Below are positions 36,998-64,000 of a DNA stretch of 64,000 nucleotides, one piece after another; the first letter of the stretch is position 1; every line of letters begins with the position of its first letter. The position numbers were made by a program, and so were the translations under genes. The notes beneath the pieces were generated by a model that was given only the letters and a program-made list of their open reading frames with translations, did not search any database and had not been told where the DNA came from. This DNA is from Basidiobolus meristosporus CBS 931.73. Lineage: Eukaryota; Fungi; Basidiobolomycota. The stretch is from NCBI GenBank assembly GCA_002104905.1, contig MCFE01000012.1:197009-261008 (forward strand), given 5' to 3'.

Positions 36998-37428
36998 CTG
37001 TAATAATTTAAACTCTTCCTGTCTAAGCATCCCTCAACACTGCTCTACCTTATGTCGCCCTTTAACTGTACCTTCTCACTGTTTCCAGAAGTAGATATGT
37101 AAACGAATAGTGTACAAATCCAATCATGCCAGTTGACAATCTATCCCATTAGCATTACCCATCGGTTTAGAAATGGCGGTTTGGATATTTCAAAATGCGA
37201 CCTACATCGCTTTTCTTTGGAAGATCGATGCACTCTTTGAGGCATAAACTTCAATGAACAGAGGGATGCCAATATCAGTGGAGTGTGGCTGGGAAATGCT
37301 GTGTGATTTTGCAGAATTTGAGTGGTCACTTTCCTTTGAATATAACAATAATTTCTCTCGAAAAATTGCACGTGCAACAGTCATCACAATTTACATGCGT
37401 CATTCATCTGTTGAGCAAAACCATAGGT

Positions 37429-46490: not shown

Positions 46491-48793
46491 GATCCAAGAT
46501 GAAGAGTTCCAATTCAATAAAATACACTTGATGCTTTGTTAATGATGAACAATTTCATGTGATTCCAATTTCAATAGGTTGGGTGATGATGACACAATCC
46601 ATTAAAAGGCTCAGCTGGTTCACAGAAGACCAAGGCAAGCCATTCAGCCGCCATATGCGGAACATGTCTATCCGAGAGCATCACCTTGGGAAATTCTGGT
46701 AAATGGGGAGGATTCTTGCACCTGCAAGCTTATCTCAACTTACGTTAGCAATAATCACTTGGGTTGTGTAATGTGAGCCTGTGAACCAGTATATTAGAGC
46801 CAAGGAAGACACAGGACTCATTCGTCAGTTTGTGCATTGAACATGCGAAATCAGTGGAGATGGTGGGGTGCAGGTACTCTAGACAAGAGTTCGCAAATGA
46901 ATGCAATTCGGTTATGGCGTCAGAGGCATTTACTCCCTTGAGGCCAATCATCAGACGTTTTCTGGTGTACAATTAGATCTGAACGAACCATTAGGACTGC
47001 TAATGCCGAAAATGGAATTGATACGCTGGTTTTTAATGCCTGGGATTCAGTAGGTTACACACAGATGATCAACTTGGCCCGACTACAGCTCCAAGCCGAA
47101 TCACATAGCAATTGGTGAAATGATACCAAATCGAGGACTGGCTGGAGTCCTCCAAGAATGTAATCTTTTGACAAATACTATTAGCAGGGCGTGGCGAAAA
47201 AATCCGGTTTCTGTAGCCACGGACGCTACCCAATCTCTGATAACCAACGTAGCCCATGATTGAAACAGCTTATGCCTCCAATTTGTAAAACCGAAACTCG
47301 TGGCGTCAGAACAGCTTAGAGCCAAGTAAATATCATTGCGGAACGGATACCATGCTGCAGCCAATTTCGGTAGGAAGCCGCCAATGACCAGGGGATGTTC
47401 GTTTTGTGATGTATATGTAGGCCTTGAATATAACAAGCTCTAGCTGTTCAGCATAGAAAATTCAGATTTACTACAACCTGTTTTATTTCCCATTGCATGC
47501 ACGACTTACTAATCCAGACATGTAGAGCGTAGAGAGATGATACCTTGCAACCAAATAATCTCTAATAAACTCAAACCAGTGCATCTACAGTGTCCATGAT
47601 ACAATGCGCCACGCTGTGGCGGTTTGTAAGCCAATAAGACAGGTGATGCTATTTCACAAACATGCATACAGTAAGAGGTGACCTGACGAGGTGCTATCAA
47701 CAGTTGAGAATGGACCCACCGCATGCTGACAGGGCCTGAAGAAAGGTTGGCCATTCTAATAGTTGTTTTCTACACGTCAACAGTGATGTTGATCCATCAG
47801 TAACGCATCAATGTCATTACAATCACAAGGACAGACACTGTTCTGGGTGATTCGACATAATTTTTTTGGGACCATGAAGTAAAGTTCCAAGTATCATCTG
47901 ATTGCTTGCGATCAAAAATCTCGTGTCGCATGTCGAAAAATAACTCAGGAGAGGAGAGGCGTGAGTGATTCTCAAATCAATGGGTGAGTCACGTATGAGC
48001 GCAGTTGGCTATTACTGAAAGTATTCGCCTTGTGTTGGCATGTGCCTTTATTAGTCACATTCCAGGCGGCACGCGGAGCTGAGTGACGTCGCAAATATAA
48101 CATGACCGTTCAATTGGTTACAAATAGAGGGCAAGGCCAGCGTAGAACTAATTTGAATACAAGAATGTCTCCTACCGTAGTGATTTTTAAGCTCCACGCT
48201 CTTACTTTGTGCGGCTGTTAGGCTGCTGGCCTTCATGTGCTGATTTTATCATCCAGCCAGTTCTCTTGACTCAGGAATCGGTGTTCTCCCTAGACCCCGT
48301 GCTTACGGTCTTGTTTTTGCTGTCAAAGTTCGGCTGCTGTTTGGTTCCCAGATACTCGCCCATTGCTTAGGTTCACAGGCATGATCGAGTAATACGTAGC
48401 TAATGGGGGAGTTCTGATACAAGGAGACTAGGCAATCTTGAAATTGGGAATCATCACGTTAAATACGTGAATTCACCTCATTGAACATGGCTGATTCGAT
48501 CATATAATTAAGTTGATTGGAAAATTTTAACACCTGACCGCGACGATTAGAAAATCGTAACACCTTGCCATTGTTATGAATATCTAGTACATGGCCCAGC
48601 CAGCTTAGATGCAGGTGCTGAATCAGCTACTCGGACTTGAGACTTCCCGGAATATAGTTATTCAGTTTATTGGCAGAGCTGGCGTAGATCTAGGTTATGG
48701 CAGTATTCCAAAACAGATTCCCGTATATTCTAGCCATTAAATCGTGCCCAAGGTCAATCACCCTAAGGATGCCCGGGACAACGACCAGTCTGT

Positions 48794-49883
48794 TTAGGCT
48801 CTACTTAATTTCCAAGCAGTGACAAACAGAGAGGTCATAAACACTGGTGTACGGGTGCCACAGTAATGGTGTACCTTGACGAAGTAGTCCTCAATAAAGG
48901 TGCTCATATCCTCGTCACTATCGAATATATTGCACTTTGTCAAACCAGACTGCAGCTGCGGCCAGATGAATGACCTAAGCTGTTCCATACCGTGTTCTCC
49001 ATGTACCAAGGTATTCTCAAGTGAATGCGAGACACAGTCGATCAAACGAAACGAGGGGACTCTATCAAGTGCTTACTGGATATTTTCCGGTGTTCGCAAC
49101 AGGTGTGATGTGAGAGTAAAACGCAGTAACATGGGATCAACATTGTGCTCATCTCTGTGCTGCTGCCAAACGTTATCTAAATCCAATAAAGTGTCACAAT
49201 GACTAAGCATAGATGCCACCAAATAACCGCCTTGCTTCAATTCCCTTGCCCGGTGAGTGAAGAATACCACCAACTGCTCTTGGGCTTCATGTTGAACTTG
49301 TTGCATCTACTCAGGGTCTATCATGAAGGATGAAAGAGTTAATGGACGATAGAGAGGCGTGCTAACTTTATGCATCCAATGGGCACTATTAAAGCAGACA
49401 CTAAGGTCCAAGGTGTTGCGAGGGAGGCATTCATTGTAAAATGATCTTGGCGATACTAGACTCAGAATATCGTTATCCGGATGAGCTGTGACGATTTCAT
49501 GGTTTTGGTGTGTTAAACCGGGATCATTCAGGCATTTAAATAATTCCTCAAAATTGTTGGTGGGAAGATCGTTATGATAAACCTGAATAGCAAATGGTCT
49601 GGTATCCTGTCGTAAGGCAAGGAGCGTATCCAGCATAACGTTTATAGCTGCCATTGAATTTTTTCCATGGCTACAACCAAAGTCTCCTATGACAATGGTG
49701 GCAGTGATTCTTGGCAACAGGCGCGGAACTGTGAAATGCGTTAAGCTTGATTGGGAATAAAATATATGATTATGTTACCTACTTTTGCTATTTAATATTT
49801 TAATTCCAAATTGCTTGAACTGAGCCTGGAGTTCTGAACTAGTGCCAGTCTTTCATTGGTTGTGCCATAGGGTTACTTGGCAT
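48794..49883 (-). pseudogene. SABATH-family (SAM-dependent carboxyl) methyltransferase pseudogene
   Basis: IGDFGCSHGKNS, QVYHNDLPTNNF, SFYNECLP and SAHWMHK motifs. Three same-frame ORFs are split by in-frame TAG (49307-49309) and TAA (49073-49075), and exon 1 is frameshifted. Confidence 0.88.
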
Positions 49884-49895
49884 TTAGGGGGGGGG

Positions 49896-51046
49896 AGACA
49901 GTCACCAACAGGTGAAATCTTTATTTCAGTTGAAACAAAGAAGCCAGTGCTACTGTTGTAGCTTTGATACAAGAGTGTGTAGCTGAGGGGAATTTGTAGG
50001 TAAGTTAATAAGGAGAGATGATAGCTCTTCAGTGCTCAAGACACTGTTCAGTGGGAAGGGGGGTAGCAAGAGGGGTAAGAGTGATTTGTGAACAACATTA
50101 ATAAGGGGAATATGATAAGGATTGATACTCATCACAAAGGGAGTGTGCTGCTTCAGATATTGCTGCCAAAGGTCTGTCAAGTACTTCAGGAAAGGCCAGC
50201 TTGGGTTTTTCTGACTGCAGAATATATTGAGCAGACTTCTTGACTTCAGGATCTCCAAGTATAGTTCTCCAGCAGGAGCCAGGTGTAGTGTGGTGTTTTC
50301 TCTTCCAGGCCTTGATCAGTGGGTTGTTGTAGTGGTGAAGTCCAAGATATAATCTGGTTCTAAGGTAGAGAAGTCTGATCTTATAGGGTGTAGACCCAAA
50401 AGCACCAAGAATTGCATGTCTGTAGGGGCATTCAGGCAGATGAGGGACCAGGGAGGTAATGCGCCAGACTGCAAACTTGTCAAGCTCAGTGCAGTCTCTA
50501 GAAGTAAGAGAGAGAATTGGTAAGCCAAATTCCAGGACAGGGAAGACAAACTGCTTAAGTACAAGGAGGCAGCTGGGAGCTGAAGTTGTAGGAGGAGTAG
50601 CAGCCAGTAGTTGGTGGAGTGCCTGTCTTGCCAGGATAATTCTCTTCTTCAGGTGTGCTCCAGAGTCTAGTCCAGTAGGAAGGAGAGGAAAGCCAAGATA
50701 TGTAGCAGAAACCTGAGCAAGTAGAGTATAGTTCTCCTGGCCGATAGGACAGCCCAAAGATACTGTCTTTGGAGTGGAAAGTGGAGATTATTCTTCTGCA
50801 GATACTGGTGGATGGTCTGGGAGTCTTGTTGCATATTGGAGGAGGATACTCTGATGTCATCAGCAAAGAGAGTAACCAAGCAGTCAGCTGAGAGTCTAGG
50901 GAATTCATTCAGGAAGATGGCACACAGTATAAAACCAAGCACAGAGCCTTGAACCACTCCATTAGGAACTAATAACACAGCTGATTGCTCACTTGGGTGC
51001 AGAATTCCTGATTGTGGATCCAGAAACAATAACCGGACAAGAAGGG
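49896..51046 (-). mobile_element. Family A LINE copy A1, 5'-truncated within RT, frameshifted
   Basis: GVVQGSVLG...LFADDI fragments and the same C-terminus (LHTLVSKLQQ*) as A3; it ends at GGG|TTAGGG. Confidence 0.9.
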
Positions 51047-51109
51047 TTAGGGGGGAGACAGTCACCAACAGGTGAAATCTTTATTTCAGTTGAAACAAAG
51101 AAGCCAGTG

Positions 51110-53909
51110 CTACTGTTGTAGCTTTGATACAAGAGTGTGTAGCTAAGGGGAATTTGTAGGTAAGTTTACAAGCAGTGATGATAGTTCTCCAGTGCTCAAG
51201 ACACTGTTCAGAGGGAAGGGGGGTAGCAAGAGGGGTATGAATGATTTGTGAACAACATTAAAGAGGGGAATATGATAAGGATTTATATTCATCATAAAGG
51301 GAGTGTGCTGCTTCAGATATTGCTGCCAAAGGTCTGTCAAGTACTTCAGGAAAGGCCAGCTTGGGTTTTTCTGACTGCAGAATATATTGAGCAGACTTCT
51401 TGACTTCAGGATCTCCAAGTATAGTTCTCCAGCAGGAGCCAGGTGTAGCATGGTGTGTTCTCTTCCAGGTCTTGATCAGTGGGTTGTTGCAGTGGTGAAG
51501 TCTGACATATAAACTGGTTATAAGGTAGAGTAGTCTGATCTTGTAGGGCATAAACCCAAAAGCTCCAAGAATAGCATGTCTGTAAGGGCATTCAGGCAGA
51601 TGAGGCACCAGGGATGTAATGCACCAGACTGCAAACCTGTCAAGTTTAGTGCAGTCTCTAGAAGTAAGAGAGAGAAGTGGTAAGCCAAATTCCAGGACAG
51701 GGAAGACAAACTGCTTGAGTAGAAGGAGGCAGCTGGGAGCTGAAGTTGTAGGAGGAGTAACAGCCAGTAGCTTGTGGAGTGCTTGTCTTGCCAGGATAAT
51801 TCACATCAGGTGTGCTCCAGAGTCTATTCCAGTAGGAAGGAAAGGAAAGCCAAGATATGTAGCAGAAACTTGAGCAGGTAGAGTGTAGTTGTCCAAGTTG
51901 ATAGGACAACCCAAAGGTACTGTCTTTGCAATGGAAAGCTGGAGATTATTCTTCTACAGATACTGGTGGATGGACTGGGAATCTTGTTGCACATTGGAGG
52001 AGGATATTCTGATGTCATCAGCAAAAAGAGTAACCAGGCAGTCAGCTGAGAGTCTTGGGAAGTCATTCAGGAGGATGGCAATCAGTATAGCACCAAACAC
52101 AGTGCCTTGAACCACCTCATTAGGAACTGAGAACACAGCTGATTGCTCACTTGGGTGCAGAATTCTTGCTTGTGGATCCAGAATCAGAGACCTGACAAGG
52201 AGGGTGAGAAATATACTGGAGAGGCATTGCAACTTGGACCAGAGCAGATCTCTGTCAGCTGAATCAAAGGCCTTAGTAATATCAAACAGAATAGAGTGAT
52301 ACTTGCACTGGAGAGAGTGATCTTGGCTAAGTATGACTGCATATTTCAAGGAGAGGCCAGCAACAAAGCCAAACTGTGCAGGGTGAGACTTGAGGGAGTC
52401 AGTGTAGAGCTCCTGTGCAATCAGAAGCTCAAACACCTTTCTGCAGGTGGGCAGCAGAGAAATTGGCCTGTAGGAGCTAGGATCCAGGTGCATTCCTTTA
52501 CCCTTGTACAGTGGCAGAACATTGGCAAAGGACCATTCCTCAGGAATAGAAAGCTGGGTGGAGCATTGCTGAACAGTGGAAGCAGAAGAGCAGACATGGC
52601 CTTGGTACTAGTCTTCAGAAGCACATATGAGATTGTGTCCACACCTGGAGCAGTAGAATTGGGAAGCTTCTTGAGCACATTCTGGATTCTCTCTTGATCA
52701 AGTGCAAGTGGGATTGGCAGAGTCTTAAAGTAAGGATGAAAGCCAGGAGTTGAGTACTGCCTTGTAGTGAAGAAGATGTTAGTCAGCTGTTCTGTTGAAG
52801 GTAACTTCCTGGAAGAGGGCCTCATTGCCCTGTAGAGTCTTGACACTGTTCTTGTTATAGAGTTGGAAGATTGCAGAGGCAAAGAACTCATAATATGATC
52901 CCAGAGCTGAGTATGCAGAGTGTGGTGAATTGCCTTGGAGTGGTGTATGGCTGTCAGGAGGAGTTTCTCTGTTTTTGGGTTAGAGAAACTCAGGTAGCTT
53001 TGTTGCAGGGCAGAAACAATGGAATTCCATTTTCTTGAGGTAACAGCAGTAGTCTTGCATGGCAGTGAGAGAGAGGCAGAGACCAGAATCAGATGCTTCA
53101 CAAAGAGCCAGGCATAGTTAAGATCATCAGGCAGAGAAAGTAGCAAACTGGCAAGCTTCAAGTAGTTTGCAAAGTCTTTCTTCTGATTCTTGGTAGCTTT
53201 GTGGGTGAGCACAGTATGTTTTGGCAGCTTCTTCTTCATAACTGATTGCATAGAAAGGGACCAGGCTGGGTGGTCAGAGGCTTTCAAGGATCCTAGCTCA
53301 TCTCCAGAGGATTGTTTGACTTCATTCACAAAGTAGAGGGCAGCAGCAGAAGGGCAGATCCAGTCAACATATCTTTTCTCAGATGAGCACCTAGTGCTAG
53401 CAGATGGCTTTCTCTTAGGAAGTTCAGTAGGAATGTAGACCTTGGCCTCATTCTTGCAGTCAGAGAAGTCTTGTTTTCAGGATGGGGAATGTTGAAATCT
53501 CCAAGCAAGATAACAGGTGTTGATATAGATTGCTGGTATTGCTGAACTTTCTGGCATACAACTTGCACTTCCTGAAGGGGGAGATTTGGAGGCAGATAGC
53601 AGAGCACCAGACTGATAGTTGGCAACTGCAGAGCAGCACAGTAAGGGGAGTAGATAGGAACACAGAGCTGAGGAGTATTGATGGTAGAAGAGATGAAGCT
53701 GATAGAGGAGGTATTCTTTGTTCTAGGAGTAGAAAAGCAATGTTGATTAGTCAAAAGTGTAGAGGGTAGCTGGACATCAATCAAACACAGGAGGGAAAAT
53801 CTTGAAAGAAGTCTCTCTAGAGTTGGTCTTGATGGCTGTATGCTGTTGCAGTTAAGCAACAGAACTTCAGGTAGTCAGGCCAAAGTTGTAGCTTCTTCCT
53901 AGGCAGCAT
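51110..53909 (-). pseudogene. A2 ORF2 (APE endonuclease + reverse transcriptase), disrupted
   Basis: The ORF pieces 53326-53859, 52421-53329, 51954-52493 and smaller fragments reassemble into the A3 protein. The likely ATG at 53909 overlaps the end of ORF1. Confidence 0.85.
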
Positions 53910-55037
53910 TGACAATGTAACCTGCAGAGTCCCAGAGCTCTTCAAATGGTGCATCACTTAAGTCAGCAAGGATGGAGATGGCATGATTCTTGAGGAAGTA
54001 TGCCACATCATAGGAGGGGGCTTGTCTCTTGATGGCAGCAAAGAAAGACAGAATGGCAACATGAACTGGAGGCTTGTTGAACAGTAGAGTAAGAGGAATC
54101 AGCTTCTTCAGGCACTATTTTGAAGTCAGTTTTCAGCCAGTTAAGGTTCTTCTCCACAAAGGCAACAAATGGATCAGCAATGTTTTGGTCTAGGAATACC
54201 TCCAGAATCTTCCCTTTTCTCCAGGCCCAGTTGACAATTCTTGAGAGCTGGATATTGCATGCCTTGAGTGCTTTCCTGATGTTGGAAATGGGAGTCCAGG
54301 GAACTTGCTTCAAGTACACCACAATCCAGGTAGAAGCTGGTGGCAGGTTTGCTGGGGGCTTGTAAGTCCTTCTGTGTTGTAATGGAGCTGCAGTAGTCAG
54401 ATTGAAGTCCACATTCTCAGTAGAGGGTTTTCTTGATGTGTCTTGCTGAATGGTACTGGAGCTGGATGTGCTGATAATTCTTGCTAGAACAGTGCCTGCA
54501 TAAGTCTGAGGTATAGCTGAGGTGACTGTAGAGGTGGAAGCAGCTGGTACAGGTGGAGAGGCAGAAACTGAAGCAGGAACTGAGGTCACCTGGGAGAAGG
54601 CAGTAGAAGCAGATTTTCTAGGAGGAACAGAGTTCACTATCCTGTTGTTCTGTAAAACACTAGAGTAGCTTTTCTGTGGAACAGGATCTTGCTCTTGAAC
54701 AGGAACAGAAACAGGAGGCTGGGGCTGAGCAGTAGTGGTAAGGCAGTGGCACTCCAAGGAAGCTTTTTGCAAGGCATCTCTGGCAGTTTTCAGGGCAGTA
54801 TTTGCTTGATTCTTGAGCTTCTTGCATTGGGCATCCAATCTCTTGTTTTCAATAGCCAGGGCAGTATTAGCAGCTTCTAAATCAGCAGTTCTCTTCTCAA
54901 GTGCAAGAAATCTCTGAAGCAATGCATCAGTAGAAGTGCTTGCATCTAGGAGAGCAGTGGCAGGAATAGAGTCCATTAACAGTGGGCTTCTTGGAGGCAA
55001 GGAAAGTGGACTGGTAGATTCAGGCACAAAAGGAGAT
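53899..55037 (-). pseudogene. A2 ORF1 (coiled coil + conserved C-terminal domain), one frameshift near 54090
   Basis: LEKRTADLEAANTAL...PPASTWIVVYLKQVPWTPISNIRKALK...LEVFLD, then after the frameshift FAAIKRQAPSYDVAYFLKNH...ELWDSA*. Homologous to the B and C ORFs. Confidence 0.8.
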
Positions 55038-55049
55038 TTAGGGGGGGGG

Positions 55050-56009
55050 TTGATAATCACCACAGGGTGAAATCTTTATTGAAATCATAAATAAAGAAGC
55101 CAAATTTGAATATGAATATTTGAGATGCAGTAAGCCTACAAGATAAACTTAGACTTTGCTGTATCCCAAATATCCTCAATACTGAAGTCTAGAGGAGAAT
55201 GTAGCAAAACTTTCTGTTCACTGTAGCATTTCTTGAGGAAGTTTATGACTTGAAGGGAAGGAGAGTTTTTCAACAAGCTGGTAAACCTTTTGAGGAGTAC
55301 TTTCTCCAGAGAGAATGGTACAAATAGTGGAATGTCTAAATGATGTCAGAATATATGCTCTGAGAGCCCCCAATCCAGCATATTTTTGACTTCTTCTGTA
55401 AAATCTTCAACAATATCTTTGTCAAGAATAACTTCCAAGAGATCCCTGGCAATGTACTGAATGCTAATAATCTTAGGCATATGAATACCTAGGTCCTTGA
55501 GGTAGTTTCTTTGTTCTGAAATTGGGAGATATCCAGCATTTCTGAAATAGCAAACAGCCCAATTGGCAGTGGGAGGAGTATCAGGGCTGATAGGGAACTT
55601 CTTCTGGCTTTAGGGTGCACTAGCTTAGGTGACTCTCTTGTTGAAAGGGCAGCTGGCTTCGGATAAGCCTGAAGTGCTTGGGAGTATGTCTGAGTATGAA
55701 TGGCAGGAGTTGCTGGTTGCTGACAGTGTTCAGATTGACCGGAAGAAGAGCTGGTTGAGGGGTTGCAAGGTATGGAAGAAGCTGAAAGAGAAGTAGATAG
55801 TGCTGGGTGAAGTTCAGAGAGAATTTTGAAAAGAACCTGGATCTGAGATTTCAACATTGAGTTTTCAGCTTCAAGATGTGAAACTTTTTGTTCAAGGTAA
55901 GAAGTCTGTAAAGAGTGAAAGTTGCATAAAGACATGAAAGAAGTAGATAATAAGAAGAAAGGAGTAGTTTGGGTGGGAGGGTGGGAAAATAGGCAAGAAG
56001 AAAAGAGAG
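55050..56009 (-). mobile_element. Family B ORF1-only element, copy B1 (ORF 55136-55935, 1-bp frameshift)
   Basis: Collinear with B2; the shared 3' signature lies ~70-85 nt after the ORF stop; no RT. Confidence 0.85.
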
Positions 56010-56370
56010 GGTGTAGGTGCTATAGTAAGGGCTAGGAAATGGTTACAAGAGCAGGGGGTCTGGGGGATGCAGTCCCCTAGAGAATAAAAAAGCAGGGGGT
56101 TGGGGGGATGCAATCCCCCATACTGCTCCTATACTCTTTAAACTCCCTTTGGATTACTTTTCTCTCATTCTTGCTTCTGGTCCCTTAGGGTTACAAATCC
56201 TTCTCCTAACCCTTATCACCTTGACCATAAATATTTTTACCCTACAATTGGAACATTGTCTGCTCATATAGTGGGCATGTCTGGGCCAATATTTGTCTTC
56301 CTATACTGTCCATATGCTCTGTATAAGACTTGATGACTATTTAATTAATAAATTGTTACTTCTAATATAT
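56010..56370. repeat. Non-coding hairpin-rich segment F, copy 1
   Basis: Highly similar to 57464-57825. Two GGGGA(C/T)GCA(G/A)TCCCC hairpins and an AGGGTTA...TAACCCT inverted pair. Confidence 0.85.
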
Positions 56371-56449
56371 ATCAGACTTGTTCCGTTGGATAGTGCCACA
56401 TTGAGCCATGAGTGCCAAATGATGCCATAGTGTGCCAGAGGGCTAGGGG

Positions 56450-57463
56450 AGGGAAAGTCACCAAGTTGGTGAAATCTTTATTTGAGTTAAGAACTAATCT
56501 AGGTACAAATAAAGAAGCCAATTAAGAGGTCTAGAACCTCTCTAATAAGTAATCTAATTTATGTTTTGTTTCATCTCTAATGTTTGTTTCAATAAAGTAA
56601 AGCTCATCAGGGGTAAATATAAAATTCAGGGGTTTTGGGGGAAGTACAAATTGTAGATGTTTCTGATCAATATAATCCAAGACTGGAACCCAGCCTGGGA
56701 TTAGGTGTAGTAGGAAAGGTGTGTGGACTTGTAAGTAGCTCTGCCACATAGATCTTAGATGGTCCTGAGCCAGTAGTCTTGGTTTCTCAGCTTTTTGAAG
56801 TTTTGAAGCAAGCTCTGTTACTACAGCAGAGCCAACCAGGGTGTGCCAGCAAGAAGATTTCAGGGAGGAGTTAGATTGAAGCCATTGTTTGATGGAGGGG
56901 TTATGTGATTTCTGAAGTTTGACTAGGAAGGAAGCACGGAGATAGACCATTCGGATTTGGTATGGGTAGAAGCCAAAGGCTCCATTAGTTGCATGGATAT
57001 AGGGAGATACTGGAAGATAAGGTACCAAGGATCTGATACACTGATGGAGAAATTTATCCAGGCGGTGAAGTTCTCTGGAGGTTAGGGGTATAATGTGGAG
57101 ACCAAACTCAAGTACCGGCAGTACATACTGCTTCAGAAGTATAGGGATCTTTTGAATTGGAGTGTCTGGAGTGACTACTACCAGAAGCTTTTTGAGAGCC
57201 TGTTGAGCAAGACGGATCCTATTATTCAGGTGGAGCTTTGAGTCAATCCCATGTTGACAAAATGGCAGACCTAGATATATTGCAGTTTGTTGTGGCAGAA
57301 TGCTAGTGTTCTGTATAGTTGTAGTGCATCCAATTGGGACTGTCTTGGAAATTGAGAGTGAGAGGTTGTTGGCAGCCAAGTACTTCTCAATGATGGCAGT
57401 GTCTGCTATGGGATTAGGAGTAGCAATCTTGATATCATCCGCATAGAGAGTTAGTAGTGGATA
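56450..57463 (-). mobile_element. Family D LINE (second RT family), 5'-truncated at the YADD motif; ORF 56531-57463 open
   Basis: LTLYADDIKI...SISKT...YLGLPF...RIRLAQQAL...YVLPVLEFGL. Homologous to family A but clearly diverged; carries the shared 3' signature. Confidence 0.88.
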
Positions 57464-57825
57464 GGGTGTAGGTGTTATAGTAAGGGCTAGGAAAAGGTTA
57501 GAAGAGCAGGGGGTCCGGGGGACGCAGTCCCCTAGAGAATAAAAGAGCAGGGGGTTTGGGGGATGCAATCCCCCATACTGCTCCCATACTCTTTAAATTC
57601 CCTTTGGATTACTTTTCTCTCATTCTTGGTGCTGGTCCCTTGGGGTTACAATTCCTCCTCCTAACCCTTATCACCCTAACCATAAATATTTTTACCCTAC
57701 AATTGGCACATTGTCTGCTCCTATAGTGGGCATGTCTGGGCCAATATTTGTCTCCCAATACTGTCCATATGCTCTGTATAAGTCTTGATGACTATTTAAT
57801 TAATAAATTGTTACTTTTAATGTAT
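57464..57825. repeat. Non-coding hairpin-rich segment F, copy 2
   Basis: Same start (GGGTGTAGGTG) and sequence as 56010-56370. Confidence 0.85.
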
Positions 57826-57985
57826 ATTTAATAATTAATGGGATACATCCCAATCTGGCCACAATCCCATTTTTTGATAAGCTTTGGGCACCATAAATTG
57901 CGCGGCCCTAATATGATAAAAAAAATTCATGGCCAATACAAATTTTCTGTAACCCAATTGCTTTTACCAAATATAAAGTGTTAGA

Positions 57986-58104
57986 GGGGGAGGGAAAGTC
58001 ACCAAGTTGGTGAAATCTTTATTTGAGTTAAGAACTAATCTAAGTATAAATAAAGAAGCCAATTAAGAGGTCTAGAACCTCTCTAATAAGTAATCTAATT
58101 TATG
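57986..58104 (-). mobile_element. Family D 3'-end stub (~120 bp)
   Basis: Nearly identical to 56450-56565, followed by TTAGGGGGG. Confidence 0.85.
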
Positions 58105-59259
58105 TTAGGGGGGAGGAAAGTCACCAAGTGGTGATATCTTTATTTACTTATGACAAGTATCTAAAGAAGCCAAGTTAATCTGAAGTAATTCCTAGAAAGC
58201 TAGGTCTGAGAGATATCTTCCTGGTAAGCCAGGTCTGAGAGTTGAGAAGCTGAGTGGTACTATATTTCCTAGTTAGCTAGGTCTGAGAGAGGTTTCCTGG
58301 AAAGCCAGGCCTGACAAGTGAGAATCTGAATATATCTGAGCTAAGTTATACTGGTTTGCGGTAGCTGGATTGTGGCCGGAAAGGCCAGTAGACTGGGGGA
58401 ACTGAGAAGAATTTCTGGGCGATCACTGGCCAAATTTACTAGGCAAATCTGGCCAAGTAGCATTTCAAGGATTTCAGCCAATCAGAGCCTAGGGTTAGGG
58501 GGGGAGGAAAGTCACCGAGTGGTGAAATCTTTATTTACTTATGACAAGTATCTAAAGAAGCCAAGTTAATCTGAAGTTAATCCTAGAAAGCTAGGTCTGA
58601 GAGTTGAGAGGCTGAGTGGTACTATATTTCCTAGTTAGCTAGGTCTGAGAGAGGTTTCCTGGAAAGCCAGGCCTGACAAGTGAGAATCTGAATATATCTG
58701 AGCTAAGTTATACTGGTTTGCGGTAGCTGGATTGTGGCCGGAAAGGCCAGTAGACTGGGGGAACTGAGAAGAATTTCTGGGCAATCACTGGCCAAATTTA
58801 CTAGGCAAATCTGGCCAAGTAGCATTTCAAGGATTTCAGCCAATCAGAGCCTAGGGTTAGGGGGGGAGGAAAGTCACCAAGTGGTGAAATCTTTATTTAC
58901 TTATGACAAGTATCTAAAGAAGCCAAGTTAATCTGAAGTTAATCCTAGAAAGCTAGGTCTGAGAGATATCTTCCTGGTAAGCCAGGTCTGAGAGTTGAGA
59001 GGCTGAGTGGTACTATATTTCCTAGTTAGCTAGGTCTGAGAGAGGTTTCCTGGAAAGCCAGGCCTGAGAAGTGAGAATCTGAATATATCTGAGCTAAGTT
59101 ATACTGGTTTGCGGTAGCTGAATTGTGGCCAGAATGGCCAGTAGACTGGGGGAACTGAGAGGAATTTCTGGGCAATCACTGGCCAAATTTACTAGGCAAA
59201 TCTGGCCAATTAGCATTTCAAGGATCTCAGCCAATCAGAGCCTTTACTTTGCCCAATGG
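58105..59259 (-). repeat. Three tandem copies of non-coding SINE-like unit E (periods 390, 362 and 403 bp)
   Basis: Junctions at 58105, 58495 and 58857. Each copy has the shared 3' signature, internal (c/t)aggtctgagag sub-repeats and a distal cagccaatcagagcct. Confidence 0.9.
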
Positions 59260-59269
59260 TTAGGGGGGG

Positions 59270-60299
59270 ATGATCATCACCAAAGGGTGAAATCTTTATT
59301 TAAATAATAAATAAAGAAGCCAAGTTTGAATATGAATATTTGAGATGCAGGAAGCCTACAAGATAATCTTGGACTTTGCTGTATCCCAAATATCCTCAAT
59401 ATCAAAGTCTAGAGGAGAATGTAGCAAGACTGCTTGTTCACTGTAGTATTTCTTGAGGAAGTTTGTGACTTGAAGGGAAGGAGAGTTTTTCAACAAGCTG
59501 GTAAATCTTTTGAGGAGTTCTTTTTCCAGAGAGAATGGCACAAAGAGTGGAATGTCCAAATGATGTCTGAATATATGCTCTGAGAGCTCCCAATCCAGCA
59601 TATTTTTGACTTCTTCTGTAAAATCTTCAACAATATCTTTGTCAAGAATAACTTCCAAGAGATCCCTGGCAATGTACTGAATGTTAATAATCTTAGGCAT
59701 ATGAATACCTAGGTCCTTGAGGTAGTTTCTTTGTTCTGATATTGGGAGATATCCTGCATTTCTGAAATAGCAAACAGCCCAGTTGGCAGTAGGAGGAGTA
59801 TCAGGGCTGACAGGGAATCTTCTTCTGGCTTTAGAGTGCACTGGCTTAGGAGACTGTCTTGATGGAAGGGCAGCTGGTTTTGGATGAGCTTGAAGTGCTT
59901 GGGAGTAGGTCTGAGTACAAGTAGTAGAAGTTCCGGGTTGCTGAGAATTTTCAGAATGACTGGATGAAGAGCTAATTGAGGGGTTGCAAGGTAAGGAAGA
60001 AGCTGAAAGAGAAGTGGAGAGGGCTGGGTGAAGTTCAGAAAGAGTTTTGAAAAGAATTTGGATCTGAGATTTCAACATTGAGTTTTCAGCTTCAAGAAGA
60101 GAAACTCTTTGTTCAAGGTAAGAAGTCTGTAAAGAGTGAAAGTTGGGTAAAGACATGGAAGTAGTAAATAAGAAGAAAGGAGTAGTTGGGGTGGGAGGGT
60201 GGGAAAATAGGTAAGAAGAAAAGAGAGGAAAGATCTGAAATTGAAAATCTCAGAATTTATAGATGGATGGACAAGGGTAGAGGATTGATTAATCCAGGG
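59270..60299 (-). mobile_element. Family B ORF1-only element, copy B2
   Basis: Intact 266-aa ORF, short 3' UTR with the signature, and a purine-rich (on +) 5' region ending at CAGGG|TTAGGG. Confidence 0.88.
59356..60156 (-). CDS. Family B ORF1 protein (266 aa, coiled coil + conserved domain)
   Basis: Uninterrupted ORF: LEQRVSLLEAENSMLK...ANWAVCYF...PISEQR.YLK...LEVILD...FTSLLKNSPS...DIWDTA. Confidence 0.85.
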   Translation of the reverse strand: MSLPNFHSLQTSYLEQRVSLLEAENSMLKSQIQILFKTLSELHPALSTSLSASSLPCNPSISSSSSHSENSQQPGTSTTCTQTYSQALQAHPKPAALPSRQSPKPVHSKARRRFPVSPDTPPTANWAVCYFRNAGYLPISEQRNYLKDLGIHMPKIINIQYIARDLLEVILDKDIVEDFTEEVKNMLDWELSEHIFRHHLDIPLFVPFSLEKELLKRFTSLLKNSPSLQVTNFLKKYYSEQAVLLHSPLDFDIEDIWDTAKSKIIL

Positions 60300-60358
60300 T
60301 TAGGGAAAAATAGGTAAGAAGAAAAGAGAGGGTAAGAAGAAAAGAGAGGCTTAGGGGG

Positions 60359-62710
60359 AGACAGTCACCAACAGGTGAAATCTTTATTTCAGTTGAAACA
60401 AAGAAGCCAGCGCTACTGTTGTAGCTTTGATACAAGAGTGTGTAGCTGAGGGGAATTTGTAGGTAAGTTAATAAGAAGTGATGATAGTTCTTCAGTGCTC
60501 AAGACACTGTTCAGTGGGAAGGGGGGTAGCAAGAGAGGTAAGAATGACTTGTGAACAACATTAATGAGGGGAATGTGATAAGGATTGATATTCATCATAA
60601 AGGGAGTGTGCTGCTGCAGATATTGCTGCCAAAGGTCTGTCAAGTACTTCAGGTAGGCCAGCTTGGGTTTTTCTGACTGCAGAATATAGTGAGCAAACTT
60701 CTTGACTTCAGGATCTCCAAGTATAGTTCTCCAGCAGGAGCCAGGTGTTGTGTGGTGTGTTCTCTTCCAGGCCTTAATCAGTGGGTTGTTGCAGTTGTGA
60801 AGTCTGAGGTATAATCTGGTTCTAAGGTAGAGAAGTCTGATCTTATAGGGCATAAACCCAAAAGCACCAAGAATAGCATGTCTGTAGGGGCATTCAGGCA
60901 AATGAGGCACCAAGGAGGTAATGCACCATACTGCAAACTTGTCAAGCTTAGTGCAGTCTCTAGAAGTAAGAGAGAGAAGTGGTAAGCCAAATTCCAGGAC
61001 AGGGAAGACAAACTGCTTGAGTAGAAGGAGGCAGCTGGGAGCTGAAGTTGTAGGAGGAGTAACAGCCAGTAGCTTGTGGAGTGCCTGTCTTGCCAGGATA
61101 ATTCTCTTCTTCAGGTGTGCTCCAGAGTCTAGTCCAGTAGGAAGGAAAGGAAAGCCAAGATATGTAGCAGAAACCTGAGCAGGTAGAGTGGAGTTCTCCA
61201 AGTTGATGGGAGAGCCCAAAGGTACTGTCTTTGCAATGGAAAGCTGGAGATTATTCTTCTGCAGATACTGGTGGATGGCCTGGGAGTCTTGTTGCACATT
61301 GGAGGAGGATATTCTGATGTCATCAGCAAAGAGAGTAACCAGGCAGTCAGCTGAGAGTCTTGGGAAATCATTCAGGAAGATGGCAAACAGTATAGGACCA
61401 AGCACAGAGCCTTGAACCACTCCATTAGGAACTGAGAACACAGCTGATTGCTCACTTGGGTGCAGAATTCTTGCTTGTGGATCCAGAAACAGAGACCTGA
61501 CAAGGAGGGTGAGAGAGGTACTGGAGAAGCATTGCAACTTGGACCAAAGCAGATTTCTGTCAACTGAATCAAAGGCCTTAGTAATATCAAACAGAACAGA
61601 GGGATACTTGCACTGGAGAGAGTGATCTTGGCTAAGTATGACTGCATATTCCAAGGAGAGGCCAGGAACAAAGCCAAACTGTGCAGGATGAAACTTGAGA
61701 GAGTCAGAGTAGAGCTCCTGAGCAAGCAGAAGCTCAAACACCTTTCTGCAGGTGGGCAGCAGAGATATTGGCCTATAGGAGCTAGGATCCAGGTGCTTTC
61801 CTTTACCCTTGTACAGTGGCAGAACATTTGCAAAGGACCATTCCTCAGGAGTAGAAAGCTGGGCTGAGCATTGCTGAAACAGTGGAAGCAGAAGTGCAGA
61901 CATGGCCTTGGTACTAGTCTTCAGAAGCTCATAGGAGATTGTGTCCACACCTGGAGCAGTAGAGTTGGGAAGCCTCTTGAGCACATTATGGATTCTCCTT
62001 TGATCAAGTGCAAGTGGGATGGGCAGAGTCTTGAAGTCAGGATGAAAGCCAGGAGTTGAGTACTGCTTTGTAGAGAAGAAGATGTTAGCCAGCTGTTCTG
62101 TTGAAGGTAACTTCCTGGAAGAGGGCCTCATTGCCCTGTAGAGTCTTGATACTGTTCTTGTTATAGAGTTGGAAGATTGCAGAGGCAAGGAACTCATAAT
62201 ATGATCCCAGAGCTGAGTATGCAGAGTGTGGTGAATTGCCTTGGAGTGGTGTATTGCTGTCAGGAGGAGTTTCTCTGTTTTTGGGTTAGGGAAGCTCAGG
62301 TAGCTTTGTTGCAGGGCTGAAACAATGGATTCCCATTTTCTTGAGGTAACAGCAGTAGTCTTGCATGGCAGTGAGAGGGAGGCAGACACCAGAATCAGAT
62401 GCTTCACAAAGAGCCAGGCAAAGTTGAGATCATCTGGCAGAGAAAGTAGCAAACTGGCAAGCTTCAAGTAGTTCCCAAAGTCTTTCTTCTGATTCTTGGT
62501 AGCTTTGTGGGTGAGCACAGTAAGTTTTGGCAGCTTCTTCTTCACAACTGGTTGCATAGAAAGGGACCAGGCTGGGTGGTCAGAGGCTCTCAAGGATCCT
62601 AGCTCAGCTCCAGAGAATTGCTTAACTTCATTCACAAAGTAGAGGGCAGCAGCAGAAGGGCAGATCCAGTCAACACATCTTTTCTCAGATTGAGCACCTA
62701 GTGCTAGCAG
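60359..62710 (-). mobile_element. Family A LINE copy A3, 5'-truncated inside the endonuclease domain
   Basis: Begins at the TTAGGGGG junction at 60351 and ends at the TTAGGGGGG junction at 62711. Confidence 0.92.
60413..62710 (-). CDS. Family A ORF2 (EN C-terminal motifs + non-LTR reverse transcriptase), open for 766 codons, 5'-partial
   Basis: RCVDWI, SDH, APGVDTI, YRPISLL, QFGF, FDITKAFD, GVVQGSVLGP, LFADD and YLGFP motifs; no stops; no CCHC knuckle or RNase H seen. Confidence 0.92.
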   Translation of the reverse strand: MLALGAQSEKRCVDWICPSAAALYFVNEVKQFSGAELGSLRASDHPAWSLSMQPVVKKKLPKLTVLTHKATKNQKKDFGNYLKLASLLLSLPDDLNFAWLFVKHLILVSASLSLPCKTTAVTSRKWESIVSALQQSYLSFPNPKTEKLLLTAIHHSKAIHHTLHTQLWDHIMSSLPLQSSNSITRTVSRLYRAMRPSSRKLPSTEQLANIFFSTKQYSTPGFHPDFKTLPIPLALDQRRIHNVLKRLPNSTAPGVDTISYELLKTSTKAMSALLLPLFQQCSAQLSTPEEWSFANVLPLYKGKGKHLDPSSYRPISLLPTCRKVFELLLAQELYSDSLKFHPAQFGFVPGLSLEYAVILSQDHSLQCKYPSVLFDITKAFDSVDRNLLWSKLQCFSSTSLTLLVRSLFLDPQARILHPSEQSAVFSVPNGVVQGSVLGPILFAIFLNDFPRLSADCLVTLFADDIRISSSNVQQDSQAIHQYLQKNNLQLSIAKTVPLGSPINLENSTLPAQVSATYLGFPFLPTGLDSGAHLKKRIILARQALHKLLAVTPPTTSAPSCLLLLKQFVFPVLEFGLPLLSLTSRDCTKLDKFAVWCITSLVPHLPECPYRHAILGAFGFMPYKIRLLYLRTRLYLRLHNCNNPLIKAWKRTHHTTPGSCWRTILGDPEVKKFAHYILQSEKPKLAYLKYLTDLWQQYLQQHTPFMMNINPYHIPLINVVHKSFLPLLLPPFPLNSVLSTEELSSLLINLPTNSPQLHTLVSKLQQ

Positions 62711-62719
62711 TTAGGGGGG

Positions 62720-63171
62720 AGGGAAAGTCACCAAAGTAGGTGAAATCTTTATTTGATTTCAGACAAGTCTAACTACAAATAAAGAAGCCAGCTGGGAATA
62801 GAAGATTCCCAAAGTAAATACTAAGTTGAATATGAATAAATCTAAGCTAAAGTTAAGGCAGTATCCCAGAGTACACTGGAGTTCAGGTTCATAGGGGAGT
62901 GAAGTAGATAAGCTTGAGAGATATAATAATCTTTGAGGAAGTGGGTAACAGCAGGTGAAGGGGATTTTTTGATAAGTGAAGTGAATCTTGAGATCAGAGA
63001 TTCCTCTAATGAGAAGGTCTTGTAAACTGGAGAATCAGGAAACTCTTTGAAGGCATGGTCAGTAGGTTCCCAGTAAAACTGGTCAGAGACATTTTGAGAG
63101 AATTGTGTTGCAATACTTTTGTCAAGTACTACCTCCAGAGTGTGATGGTTGATAAATCTCATGTTAACAAT
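62720..63171 (-). mobile_element. Family C ORF1-only element, copy C1 (5'-truncated)
   Basis: 3' part of C2 with the shared signature; ends at T|TTAGGGG. Confidence 0.85.
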
Positions 63172-63178
63172 TTAGGGG

Positions 63179-64000
63179 AGGGAAAGTCACCAAGGTAGGT
63201 GAAATCTTTATTTGATTTCAGACAAGTCTAACTACAAATAAAGAAGCCAGTTGGGAATAGAAGATTCCCAAAGTAAACACTAAGTTGAATATGAATAAAT
63301 CTAAGCTAAAGTTAAGGCAGTATCCCAGAGTACACTGGAGTTCAGGTTCATGGGGGAGTGAAGTAGATAAGCTTCAGAGATATAATAATCTTTTAAGAAG
63401 TGGGTAACAGCAGGTGAAGGGGAGTTTTTGATAAGTGAAGTGAATCTTGAGAGCAGAGATTCCTCTAAGGAGAAGGTCTTGTAAACTGGAGAATCAGGAA
63501 ACTCCTTGAAGGCATGGTCAGTAGGTTCCCAGTAAAGCTGATCAGAGACATTTTGAGAGAACTCTTTAGCAATACTTTTGTCAAGTACTACCTCCAGAGT
63601 GTGATTGTTGATAAATCTCATGTTAACAATCTTGGATAAATTGTAACCTTGTGGCTTGAGATACATCCTATGCTCAGATATAGGAATGAACTCCACATTG
63701 GCAAAGTAGGAGACAGCCCAGTCAGCAGCAGGAGGCAAATCAGAAGTAGCAGGAAACTTTCTTTTAGTCTTGGGAGGAGCAGCAGGATGTCTTGAGGAAG
63801 CAGGAACAGGCTTTTTGACAGCTTCAGAGTAGGAAGAGTGAGCAGGAGCAGATGATTCTTGGGGAGTCTTGTTGACAGGAACAGCTGGCAGAGAGACAAT
63901 AGATTCTTGCAGATCAGAGAAGGCAGAAAACAGCTTTTGAACTTGTTTCTTGAGTAAAGCATTTTCAGCTTCAACAAGTGCAAGCCTTTCCTCAAGGAAG
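63179..64000 (-). mobile_element. Family C ORF1-only element, copy C2 (runs off the window; ORF 63301-63999 open)
   Basis: FLEERLALVEAENALLK...PPAADWAVSYF...PISEHRMYLK...LEVVLD...FTSLIKNSPS...VLWDTA*, followed by a short UTR and the signature. Confidence 0.87.

What the first reader, a model, noticed from the sequence alone, without database searches (positions are those of the whole stretch)
49884..64000. HeT-A/TART-like telomere-elongating retrotransposon array in a fungus
Seen in sequence: 12 modules in 14 kb, all in one orientation with their 3' ends facing the genic interior. 5' truncations are variable, no target-site duplications are visible, no module is nested inside another, and every junction carries a TTAGGG-type word. 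Established: Drosophila HeT-A/TART/TAHRE arrays have this polarity because the chromosome 3'-OH primes reverse transcription. SART/TRAS (APE) and Magnaporthe MoTeR (RLE) instead insert into long telomere tracts, and Athena/Coprina are EN-less Penelope elements. Inference: APE-type LINEs and their dependants were added serially onto a chromosome end here, forming a multi-family end-extension system that I do not recognise as described in fungi.
Basis: partly seen in the sequence, partly recalled or inferred. Interest (0 to 1): 0.95.

Follow-up and report, generated by a model that had tools for sequence, protein, structure and literature searches.

The report
Telomere-tailed LINE stack at chromosome end
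The last 14 kb of this Basidiobolus meristosporus contig is a one-way stack of jumping genes whose RNA ends in the telomere repeat instead of poly(A), apparently copied one after another onto a worn chromosome tip; I found no report of such elements with this cutting enzyme in fungi.

Summary
Window 49884-64000 holds 14 head-to-tail modules, all with the sense strand on minus. Twelve carry one 3' signature and two (family C) do not. They belong to two APE+RT LINE lineages (A, D), two ORF1-only families (B, F), one non-coding family (E) and C.

Each signature module ends in two conserved hairpins, a C-run and UAA(CCCUAA), with no poly(A). The window ends at the contig end, inside module F2.

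Three sister contigs (C1, C2, C22) carry the same kind of array. Each ends in 190-220 bp of (TTAGGG)n directly after a 5'-truncated module.

Between modules there are at most about 2.5 telomere repeats. The first module joins unique genic DNA directly. Junctions show 1-4 nt of microhomology. Copies get younger towards the tip.

My favoured reading (0.6) is serial reverse transcription onto nearly bare G-strand 3' ends, followed by telomerase capping. A TRAS/SART-like nick is the main rival (0.25). It is not Drosophila-like replacement of telomerase.

Related elements occur in B. ranarum. I found no paper describing them. This scan had already found the same system on other contigs of this genome (s1-222099, s1-202185, s1-192774).

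The parts
49307..49717 (-). Context: N-terminal exon of a SAM-dependent carboxyl methyltransferase gene. It is the last ordinary gene before the array, which starts 167 bp upstream of it.
   Evidence: Pfam Methyltransf_7 3.5e-23, profile positions 14-130. The flank 47000-49800 is unique in the genome apart from two weak paralogues.
49884..51046 (-). A1: 3' 1.16 kb of LINE family A. It is the most proximal and oldest copy, joined directly to unique DNA through TTTAGGGGGGGGG.
   Evidence: ORF2 is broken into pieces. Terminal branch 0.049.
51047..55037 (-). A2: 3.99 kb family A copy with ORF1 (coiled coil plus C-terminal domains) and ORF2 (APE-like plus RT). It is broken by stops and frameshifts and lacks about 430 bp of the 5' end.
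   Evidence: Terminal branch 0.036.
55038..56010 (-). B1: ORF1-only element with a broken ORF.
   Evidence: 91.7% identical to B2. ORF fragment of 148 aa.
56005..56451 (-). C1: family C module without the hairpin signature. It starts with degenerate G-strand-like words. The distal 79 nt are unassigned.
   Evidence: 93.5% identical to C2 over 368 bp. Related copy at L003:9612-9732, right after GGTTAGGGTTAGGG.
56452..57466 (-). D1: 3' 1.0 kb of a second LINE lineage, D (C-terminal half of the RT protein).
   Evidence: 45% aa identity to A3 ORF2. A 118-aa stretch with one mismatch to B. meristosporus protein P0005.
57460..57989 (-). C2: second family C module. The distal 162 nt are unassigned.
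57990..58104 (-). D2: 115-bp 3' fragment of family D.
   Evidence: 98.3% identical to D1.
58105..58490 (-). E1: non-coding, SINE-like dependant carrying the shared 3' module.
   Evidence: No tRNA and no Rfam hit.
58491..58852 (-). E2: non-coding dependant. It has the same 5' end and junction (TAGGGTTAGGGGGGG) as E1.
58853..59259 (-). E3: non-coding dependant. Its 5' end is 17 nt longer than in E1 and E2.
   Evidence: 96-97% identical to copies on contig C2.
59260..60350 (-). B2: ORF1-only element with an intact 266-aa ORF (59356-60156). Its 5' UTR is built of repeat units that each begin CCCTAA-CCCTGG.
   Evidence: Homologue of 269 aa in B. ranarum, 61% identical. 5' repeat structure.
60351..62710 (-). 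A3: 2.36 kb family A copy with a 740-aa open frame (RT and C-terminal part). It is the youngest A copy in the window.
   Evidence: RVT_1 2.2e-25. Terminal branch 0.002; 100% identical over 816 bp to a copy on contig C3.
62711..63171 (-). F1: 0.46 kb 3' part of ORF1-only family F.
   Evidence: 96% identical to F2. Its ORF is 47% identical to B2.
63172..64000 (-). F2: family F copy that runs off the contig end.
   Evidence: Short-read contigs continue the F sequence beyond 64000 (loose end at 63999).

Best explanation
This is the inner part of a chromosome-end array of telomere-specialised non-LTR retrotransposons of Basidiobolus meristosporus.

Components. Two autonomous LINE lineages (A, D) encode an ORF1 protein and a compact APE-type endonuclease plus reverse transcriptase. 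Families B and F keep only an ORF1-type gene. Family E is non-coding.

Shared 3' module. All of these families end, on the RNA, in two hairpins (UCUUUAUUU/AAAUAAAGA and UCACC/GGUGA), a pyrimidine/C-run, and then UAA or UAACCCUAA. This tail is the complement of the telomere G-strand, and there is no poly(A).

Inferred mechanism. The reverse transcriptase recognises the hairpin module. The telomere-like RNA tail anneals by 1-4 nt (or one repeat) to the 3' end of the G-strand of a chromosome end that has lost nearly all of its TTAGGG tract. The end is then extended by reverse transcription, so the 3' end of each element faces the centromere. Telomerase caps the new end with TTAGGG. When that cap is lost again, sometimes together with part of the last element, the next element is added.

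What is shown: the element anatomy, the polarity, the terminal position on sister contigs, the very short inter-module telomere words, the microhomology at junctions, and the age gradient.

What is inferred: priming from a free end without a nick, recognition of the hairpins by the RT, and any benefit to the host.
For: - Signature: 12 of 12 hits are on one strand and only in the last 14 kb. Genome-wide there are 1889 + 232 hits, against 6 + 7 for the control pattern.
- Position: on the 7 contigs of known length (1.25 Mb in total), all 37 hits lie within 22.2 kb of an end, with the G-strand pointing outward.
- Telomere caps: C1, C2 and C22 end in 190-220 bp of (TTAGGG)n directly after a 5'-truncated module.
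- Inter-module repeats: no (TTAGGG)3 or longer occurs inside any sampled array. At 36 junctions the telomere-register run before the element's G-run is 0-8 nt, with a mode of 3.
- Array starts: the arrays begin on unique DNA with no telomere tract. This is seen at window 49884, 167 bp from a gene start, at L005:3736, L010:4582 and L009:4777, and in B. ranarum (L023).
- Microhomology: 13 of 14 clean junctions share at least 1 nt and 7 of 14 share at least 2 nt. Random break points give 28% and 4%.
- Age gradient: terminal branches run 0.049 > 0.036 > 0.002 from proximal to distal in this window. The direction is the same in C1, C2 and C3 and reversed in C22.
- Intact ORF2 copies lie next to the terminal tract.
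- Short-read contigs show more than 140 joints from variable positions to the fixed module 3' starts, with AG, TAG, TTAG or TAGGG between.
- The 3' module is shared by 7 window modules and 3 modules from other samples. Two pairs in stem 1 covary, and stem 2 has a compensatory U-A to A-U change in B. ranarum.
- Enzyme: APE fold and motifs; RT domain.
Against: - The endonuclease keeps its catalytic motifs across 38-63% aa divergence. It is therefore probably used, and a nick in telomeric DNA is not excluded.
- This contig does not itself reach a telomere.
- Only seven contig ends were examined. Genome-wide positions could not be completed because the genome tools stopped being offered.
- The age gradient rests on few copies and has exceptions (C22; E2).
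- No RNA data were found, so the RNA 3' end is inferred from DNA copies.
- Microhomology at 5' junctions also arises in ordinary target-primed insertion.
Confidence: 0.6

Rival explanations
1. TRAS/SART-like targeting. The APE endonuclease nicks the G-strand of double-stranded telomeric repeats at a fixed position and primes reverse transcription there. The arrays then arise by site-specific insertion into the terminal tract rather than by extension of a free end.
For: - The APE fold has all catalytic motifs kept and looks to be under purifying selection.
- TRAS1 EN is among the best structural matches (1wdu, E 1e-10).
- The orientation is the same as TRAS1, with the 3' end followed by the C-strand repeat (established knowledge; PMC5537684).
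- Insertion into the terminal tract would also give a distal-younger gradient.
Against: - Terminal tracts are 190-220 bp or more, yet none of 36 junctions keeps more than about 2 repeats on the proximal side, and no internal (TTAGGG)3 exists.
- The first modules join unique DNA with no telomere tract at all.
- There are no poly(A) tails.
- Random nicking within a tract of about 35 repeats would leave a broad spread of internal tract lengths.
Confidence: 0.25
2. Self-targeted intercalation. The endonuclease recognises the TTAGGGGG junction word and 3' module of resident copies, and new copies insert between existing modules anywhere in the array.
For: - Every junction would then keep exactly one telomere-like word, as seen.
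- The G-run is longer than the telomeric GGG and is specific to the elements.
Against: - Ages rise towards the genes within families in the window and in 4 of 5 arrays.
- The youngest, intact copies lie next to the terminal tract.
- It cannot explain the first module sitting on unique DNA.
Confidence: 0.07
3. The arrays grew mainly by recombination (unequal exchange, break-induced copying between chromosome ends) or are partly assembly artefacts, not by repeated retrotransposition.
For: - E1 and E2 share the same 5' end and junction.
- There are three tandem 120-nt A fragments in L008.
- A3 is 100% identical over 816 bp to a copy on another contig.
Against: - Module order and truncation points differ on every contig, and junctions other than E-E are unique in the sample.
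- Independent short-read contigs reproduce the junction type at more than 140 different truncation points.
- The same architecture appears in a separate B. ranarum assembly and in Logan/ENA contigs.
Confidence: 0.03

Closest known systems
HeT-A / TART / TAHRE of Drosophila (Jockey clade)
   Same: - One-way head-to-tail terminal arrays with 3' ends towards the centromere and variable 5' truncation.
- A mix of autonomous APE+RT elements and a gag-only partner (B and F resemble HeT-A in this).
- A conserved APE domain despite apparent end addition (PMC5537684).
   Different: - Here the chromosome ends still carry telomerase-type (TTAGGG)n.
- The elements end in a telomere-repeat tail and a hairpin module, not oligo(A).
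- The host is a fungus.
- Clade relationship was not established.
Athena / Coprina endonuclease-deficient Penelope-like elements
   Same: - A short stretch of telomere repeat at the 3' end of each copy.
- Terminal position, 5' truncation, and addition to uncapped ends next to genes (PMC5537684; PMC8557442 abstract).
   Different: - The RT here is LINE-type. The best solved relatives are L1 ORF2p.
- It carries an N-terminal APE endonuclease and a separate ORF1. It has no GIY-YIG domain and no pLTRs.
TRAS / SART of Bombyx and Tribolium (R1 clade)
   Same: - APE-type LINEs specific for telomeres in a host that has telomerase repeats.
- Same orientation as TRAS1.
- The predicted EN fold matches TRAS1 EN.
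   Different: - TRAS and SART insert inside long telomeric tracts and carry poly(A).
- Here there are at most about 2.5 repeats between modules, direct joins to unique DNA, and a telomere-repeat tail.
MoTeR, FoTeR, Cnl1 (fungal telomeric non-LTR elements, CRE clade)
   Same: - Fungal chromosome-end arrays.
- Telomere-like words in the 5' region (the B family 5' UTR units begin CCCTAA).
   Different: Those elements carry a restriction-like endonuclease and cluster with CRE/SLACS (PMC12857005). The elements here have an APE domain at the N-terminus of ORF2.
Zepp of Chlorella; stringent-type LINE/SINE pairs (for example UnaL2/UnaSINE)
   Same: - Zepp is a LINE accumulated at telomeres of a telomerase-positive organism (listed in PMC10088271).
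- Stringent LINEs share a 3' stem-loop and a short repeat tail with their SINEs (own knowledge).
   Different: - Zepp has poly(A).
- In the stringent LINEs I know of, the tail repeat is not the telomere repeat and insertion is genome-wide.

Membership tests
APE-type non-LTR retrotransposon (LINE) | Reverse transcriptase domain of LINE type | tested here: met
   Pfam RVT_1 2.2e-25 on window 60413-62635(-). The best solved relatives are human L1 ORF2p, 4e-13.
APE-type non-LTR retrotransposon (LINE) | N-terminal AP-endonuclease (EEP) fold with catalytic residues | tested here: met
   - Pfam matches are weak and mostly below cutoff.
- The model has pLDDT 83.7.
- Foldseek finds ExoIII, APE1 and TRAS1 EN at E about 1e-10.
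- The N, Y, GDxN, D and SDH motifs are kept. The metal-binding E is replaced by D, and the PTYW loop is deleted.
APE-type non-LTR retrotransposon (LINE) | No LTRs, 5'-truncated copies, ORF1 upstream of ORF2 | tested here: met
APE-type non-LTR retrotransposon (LINE) | Assignment to a named clade (Jockey, CR1, L1, R1, Tad1 and others) | not testable with these tools
   No reference set of clade RTs was available. The nearest non-Basidiobolus proteins are only 25-36% identical APE+RT proteins of about 890 aa, and one carries an automatic 'jockey' name. The Atlas gives animal LINE clusters only.
HeT-A/TART/TAHRE-type telomere | Terminal one-way arrays with 3' ends towards the centromere | tested here: met
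HeT-A/TART/TAHRE-type telomere | Retroelements replace telomerase repeats at the very end | tested here: not met
   C1, C2 and C22 end in 190-220 bp of (TTAGGG)n.
HeT-A/TART/TAHRE-type telomere | Priming by the chromosome's own 3'-OH without a nick | tested here: inconclusive
   Favoured by the near absence of internal telomere tracts, by direct joins to unique DNA and by microhomology. However, a conserved APE is present.
TRAS/SART-type telomere-repeat-specific LINE | Insertion at a fixed site within long telomeric repeat tracts, with repeats on both sides | tested here: not met
   At most about 2.5 repeats lie between modules, and none lies at the array starts.
TRAS/SART-type telomere-repeat-specific LINE | Poly(A) tail | tested here: not met
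   No A or T runs occur at any of 36 junctions.
Athena/Coprina EN-deficient Penelope-like elements | Short telomere repeats at the 3' end and a terminal location | tested here: met
Athena/Coprina EN-deficient Penelope-like elements | No endonuclease, and a Penelope/telomerase-like RT | tested here: not met
   An APE domain is present, and the RT matches L1 ORF2p best.
MoTeR/FoTeR/Cnl1 (CRE clade) | Restriction-like endonuclease C-terminal to the RT | tested here: not met
   Pfam and the fold search find only an N-terminal APE plus RVT_1. The clade definition comes from PMC12857005.

The most novel reading that the evidence does not exclude
An early-diverging fungus runs a second, RNA-templated end-healing system beside telomerase. 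Several families of APE-type LINEs, gag-only elements and non-coding passengers have converged on the telomerase and Athena trick of carrying a CCCUAA template-like tail behind a protein-binding hairpin. With it they extend chromosome ends that have lost their cap, even when erosion has reached genes. The system may be genus-wide and, in an organism with very many chromosome ends, may be needed by the host.
Probability: 0.45. Interest if true: 0.9.

Novelty: new variant of a known kind. Interest (0 to 1): 0.8.

Why it matters
Telomere-specialised retroelements are the main evidence for the evolutionary link between retrotransposons and telomerase, and only a handful of systems are known.

This one combines features that so far were seen only separately:
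- an APE-type LINE with ORF1 (as in TART, TRAS and SART);
- a gag-only partner (as in HeT-A);
- a telomere-repeat 3' tail (as in the endonuclease-less Athena and Coprina elements);
- shared-tail dependants (as in stringent LINE/SINE pairs).

It works in a telomerase-positive fungus that can be cultured. That makes two open questions directly testable. One is why telomeric LINEs keep an endonuclease. The other is whether retroelement addition serves as a back-up for short or broken ends.

The arrays also mark chromosome ends in a very fragmented 89-Mb assembly, and they show genes lying within 200 bp of healed ends.

Tried and rejected
- Rfam on 49000-64000 gave only one chance-level hit, and ARAGORN found no tRNA. 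I therefore do not call family E a tRNA-derived SINE.
- The whole-RNA fold of E3 is not better than shuffles (z = -1.2).
- The bacterial-type promoter and terminator scan is irrelevant here; it merely re-finds the hairpins.
- The ORF1-only protein model shows a coiled coil, a beta-alpha-beta-beta-alpha-beta domain and a helical tail. It has no significant PDB match, so 'RRM-like' remains only a description of topology.
- The pattern scan of JGI metagenome contigs for the hairpin signature gave 3 chance-like hits with no telomere words.
- No RNA run was found, so nothing can be said about expression. Run X5 holds only two low-depth contigs, and X6 (same species label, 2013) holds only short diverged pieces.
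- Clade placement of the RT failed for lack of reference sequences.
- To learn contig lengths I sent fetch from genomes out-of-range coordinates. I did not try other routes, so the genome-wide map of all 2121 signature copies was not completed.
- I considered whether family C might be a telomerase-RNA-derived copy. I rejected this as unsupported: there is no Rfam hit, and its orientation implies the RNA carries G-strand words.

Full report
**Where the window lies and what organism it is.** The window is G000:C224:197009-261008, and contig C224 is 261008 bases long, so the window ends at the contig end. The genome has 89.5 Mb in 1366 contigs. A protein search with the RT ORF returned a Basidiobolus meristosporus CBS 931.73 protein (P0005). 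Part of P0005 matches family D in the window over 118 residues with one mismatch. Earlier notes of this scan name the same organism and describe the same system on other contigs. I used those notes as leads and re-tested the claims that matter here.

**The observation.** The word GGTGAAATCTTTATT (up to 2 mismatches) occurs 12 times in the window, always on the + strand and only between 49911 and 63212; 0.32 hits are expected by chance.

Self-BLAST and the junction listing give 14 head-to-tail modules. In order they are A1, A2, B1, C1, D1, C2, D2, E1, E2, E3, B2, A3, F1 and F2; coordinates are in the parts list. Twelve carry the signature. The two family C modules do not.

No family matches window 1-49800. 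Ten of the 12 signature junctions read exactly TTAGGG, and two read CTAGGGG or TTAGAGGGGG. The + strand of the array is G-rich, with GC skew +0.16 to +0.30 against about +/-0.1 in the genic part.

The array starts 167 bp upstream of the N-terminal exon of a Methyltransf_7 gene. That flank is unique in the genome.

**What the modules are.**
- *Family A* is a LINE. A2 has an ORF1 with a coiled coil, followed by an ORF2. A3 has a 740-aa open frame with RVT_1 at 2.2e-25. A full-length copy on contig C3 is about 4.4 kb (L010:4587-8998), so A2 lacks about 430 bp at its 5' end.
- *The ORF2 N-terminus* matches Pfam endonuclease families only weakly. A model built on 25 aligned sequences is confident (pLDDT 83.7). 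It matches exonuclease III, APE1 and the TRAS1 endonuclease at E about 1e-10. The alignment with ordinary LINE endonucleases shows the N, Y, GDxN, D and SDH motifs conserved. The metal-binding Glu is replaced by Asp, and one DNA-contact loop is deleted. These residues are invariant across relatives that are 38-63% identical, so the domain is probably active.
- *Family D* is a second LINE lineage, 45% identical in protein to A.
- *Families B and F* encode only an ORF1-type protein. It has a coiled coil, a disordered linker, a beta-alpha-beta-beta-alpha-beta domain and a helical tail. It is homologous to the C-terminal domains of the LINE ORF1. A 269-aa counterpart exists in Basidiobolus ranarum, 61% identical, so this gag-only design is maintained.
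- *Family E* is non-coding, with no tRNA or Rfam match.
- *Family C* is unexplained; see the passing notes.

**The shared 3' module.** On the sense strand, all signature families end in the same order of parts:
1. a hairpin UCUUUAUUU / AAAUAAAGA enclosing a variable loop;
2. a hairpin UCACC / GGUGA with a variable 4-6 nt loop;
3. a pyrimidine stretch and a C-run of variable length;
4. UAA or UAACCCUAA.

RNAalifold on seven window modules and three modules from another sample recovers both stems, with two covarying pairs in stem 1. The B. ranarum copy has ACACC / GGUGU, a compensatory change in stem 2. No copy has poly(A).

Related LINEs (48-66% aa identity) on Logan and ENA contigs carry the same module and have head-to-tail neighbours.

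**Are these chromosome ends?** The signature occurs 1889 + 232 times in the genome, against 6 + 7 for a control word. For the seven contigs whose length I know (1.25 Mb together), all 37 hits lie within 22.2 kb of one end, with the G-rich strand running outward.

All three contig ends that I read through to the last base (C1, C2, C22) finish with 190-220 bp of (TTAGGG)n directly after a 5'-truncated module. The present contig stops inside F2, and short-read contigs continue the F sequence beyond it. Its terminal position therefore rests on analogy with the sister contigs.

**How the array grew.**
- *Age.* In a tree of the 3' 1 kb of 14 family A copies, terminal branches in this window are 0.049 (A1), 0.036 (A2) and 0.002 (A3) from the genes outward. 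C1, C2 and C3 show the same direction and C22 the opposite. Proximal A and B copies have broken ORFs and distal ones are intact. The ORF2 copies that touch the terminal tract on C1 and C2 are open over 892-930 codons. Median identity to copies on other contigs rises from about 93% to about 98% along the window, with E2 as an outlier. This argues against random intercalation.
- *Telomere repeats between modules.* At 36 junctions the telomere-register run before the element's own G-run is 0-8 nt, most often just TTA. The longest internal tracts seen are 14 nt. No (TTAGGG)3 occurs inside any sampled array, although terminal tracts hold 30 or more repeats.
- *Array starts.* Arrays start directly on unique DNA, with no telomere tract, in this window, on three other contigs and in B. 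ranarum.
- *Microhomology.* Where a longer copy shows how the older module would have continued, 13 of 14 junctions share at least 1 nt and 7 of 14 share at least 2 nt between the older module and the incoming tail. Random break points give 28% and 4%.
- *Independent data.* Short-read contigs of the same sample show more than 140 joints from variable positions to the fixed 3' starts, with AG, TAG, TTAG or TAGGG between.
- *Block copying.* Module order and truncation points differ on every contig, which argues against copying in blocks.

**Mechanism.** These facts fit reverse transcription primed by a G-strand 3' end that has lost almost all of its TTAGGG tract, and sometimes part of the last element or subtelomere. 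The RNA's CCCUAA-type tail supplies a few base pairs. Telomerase then rebuilds the tract.

Insertion by an endonuclease nick at random positions in a tract of about 35 repeats should leave long internal tracts, and these are not seen. The conserved endonuclease nevertheless needs a role. The same puzzle is on record for TART and TAHRE (PMC5537684). I give free-end priming 0.6, a TRAS/SART-like nick 0.25, self-targeted intercalation 0.07, and recombination or artefact 0.03.

**Comparison with known systems.**
- A 2023 survey lists telomeric retroelements in insects, Giardia, Chlorella, Anolis and rotifers. For fungi it lists only MoTeR1 (PMC10088271).
- FoTeR, MoTeR and Cnl1 form a CRE-clade group with a restriction-like endonuclease (PMC12857005).
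- Cnl1 forms large subtelomeric arrays in Cryptococcus (10.1101/2021.08.11.455996).
- Searches for Basidiobolus or Zoopagomycota together with telomere terms found no description of these elements. The library is incomplete, so this is absence of evidence only.

The system works like HeT-A/TART in array form and in its partner set, and like Athena/Coprina in tail logic. It is a member of neither group, and its LINE clade remains open. I therefore rate it a new variant of a known kind.

**Limits.**
- Only seven contig ends were sampled.
- There are no RNA data.
- Ages rest on few copies.

Noticed in passing
window 56005-56451 and 57460-57989; L003:9612-9732: Family C modules sit in the array in the common orientation but lack the double-hairpin tail. 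They begin with degenerate G-strand-like words (GGGTGTAGGTGYTATAGTAAGGGCTAGG). They carry two G5/C5 hairpins and internal C-strand telomere words. Their distal 79 and 162 nt match nothing else I hold. What mobilises them is unknown.
   Followed up: partly
genome-wide: Signature hits are 1889 on the + strand and 232 on the - strand, so about nine in ten arrays lie at the right end of their contig. This is probably an effect of how the assembler orients dead-end paths, but I did not check it.
   Followed up: no
L004:4843-4880 (contig C1, inside the terminal tract): A 38-nt non-telomeric insert lies between GGTTAGGGGTTAGGG and the long terminal (TTAGGG)n. It matches nothing else in my sample.
   Followed up: partly
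L008:1-340 (contig C2): Three tandem 120-nt 3' fragments of family A are all cut at the same point, each followed by a telomere word. They could be repeated abortive additions, template jumps or a tandem duplication.
   Followed up: no
window 60230-60350; L023:1-230 (B. ranarum): The 5' UTR of ORF1-only family B is made of units of about 100 nt that each begin CCCTAA-CCCTGGATTAATC. The TTAGGG at 60300 is therefore internal to B2. This recalls the telomere-like 5' repeats of MoTeR-type elements.
   Followed up: partly
L010:8999-9176; L014:1-90; L019:1-150: A segment of about 170 nt with a CATCCATCCATCC motif lies just distal to (5' of) full-length LINE copies. Sometimes it is separated from them by AACCCTAACCCTAA and sometimes it is fused to them. 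It may be a separate module or a promoter-bearing leader.
   Followed up: no
window 49307-49717 (-): The first exon of a SAM-dependent carboxyl methyltransferase gene (Methyltransf_7) lies only 167 bp from the array, so this chromosome end was healed almost at a gene start.
   Followed up: partly
window 45648-46490 (+), 37285-38163 (+): Ordinary genes lie in the interior: a C2H2 zinc-finger protein and a macro-domain protein. No array families occur there.
   Followed up: no
run X6: A 2013 run with the same species label holds only short pieces of the E and B 5' regions, 90-95% identical, and none of the A3 sequence. The array content seems to differ strongly between isolates.
   Followed up: no
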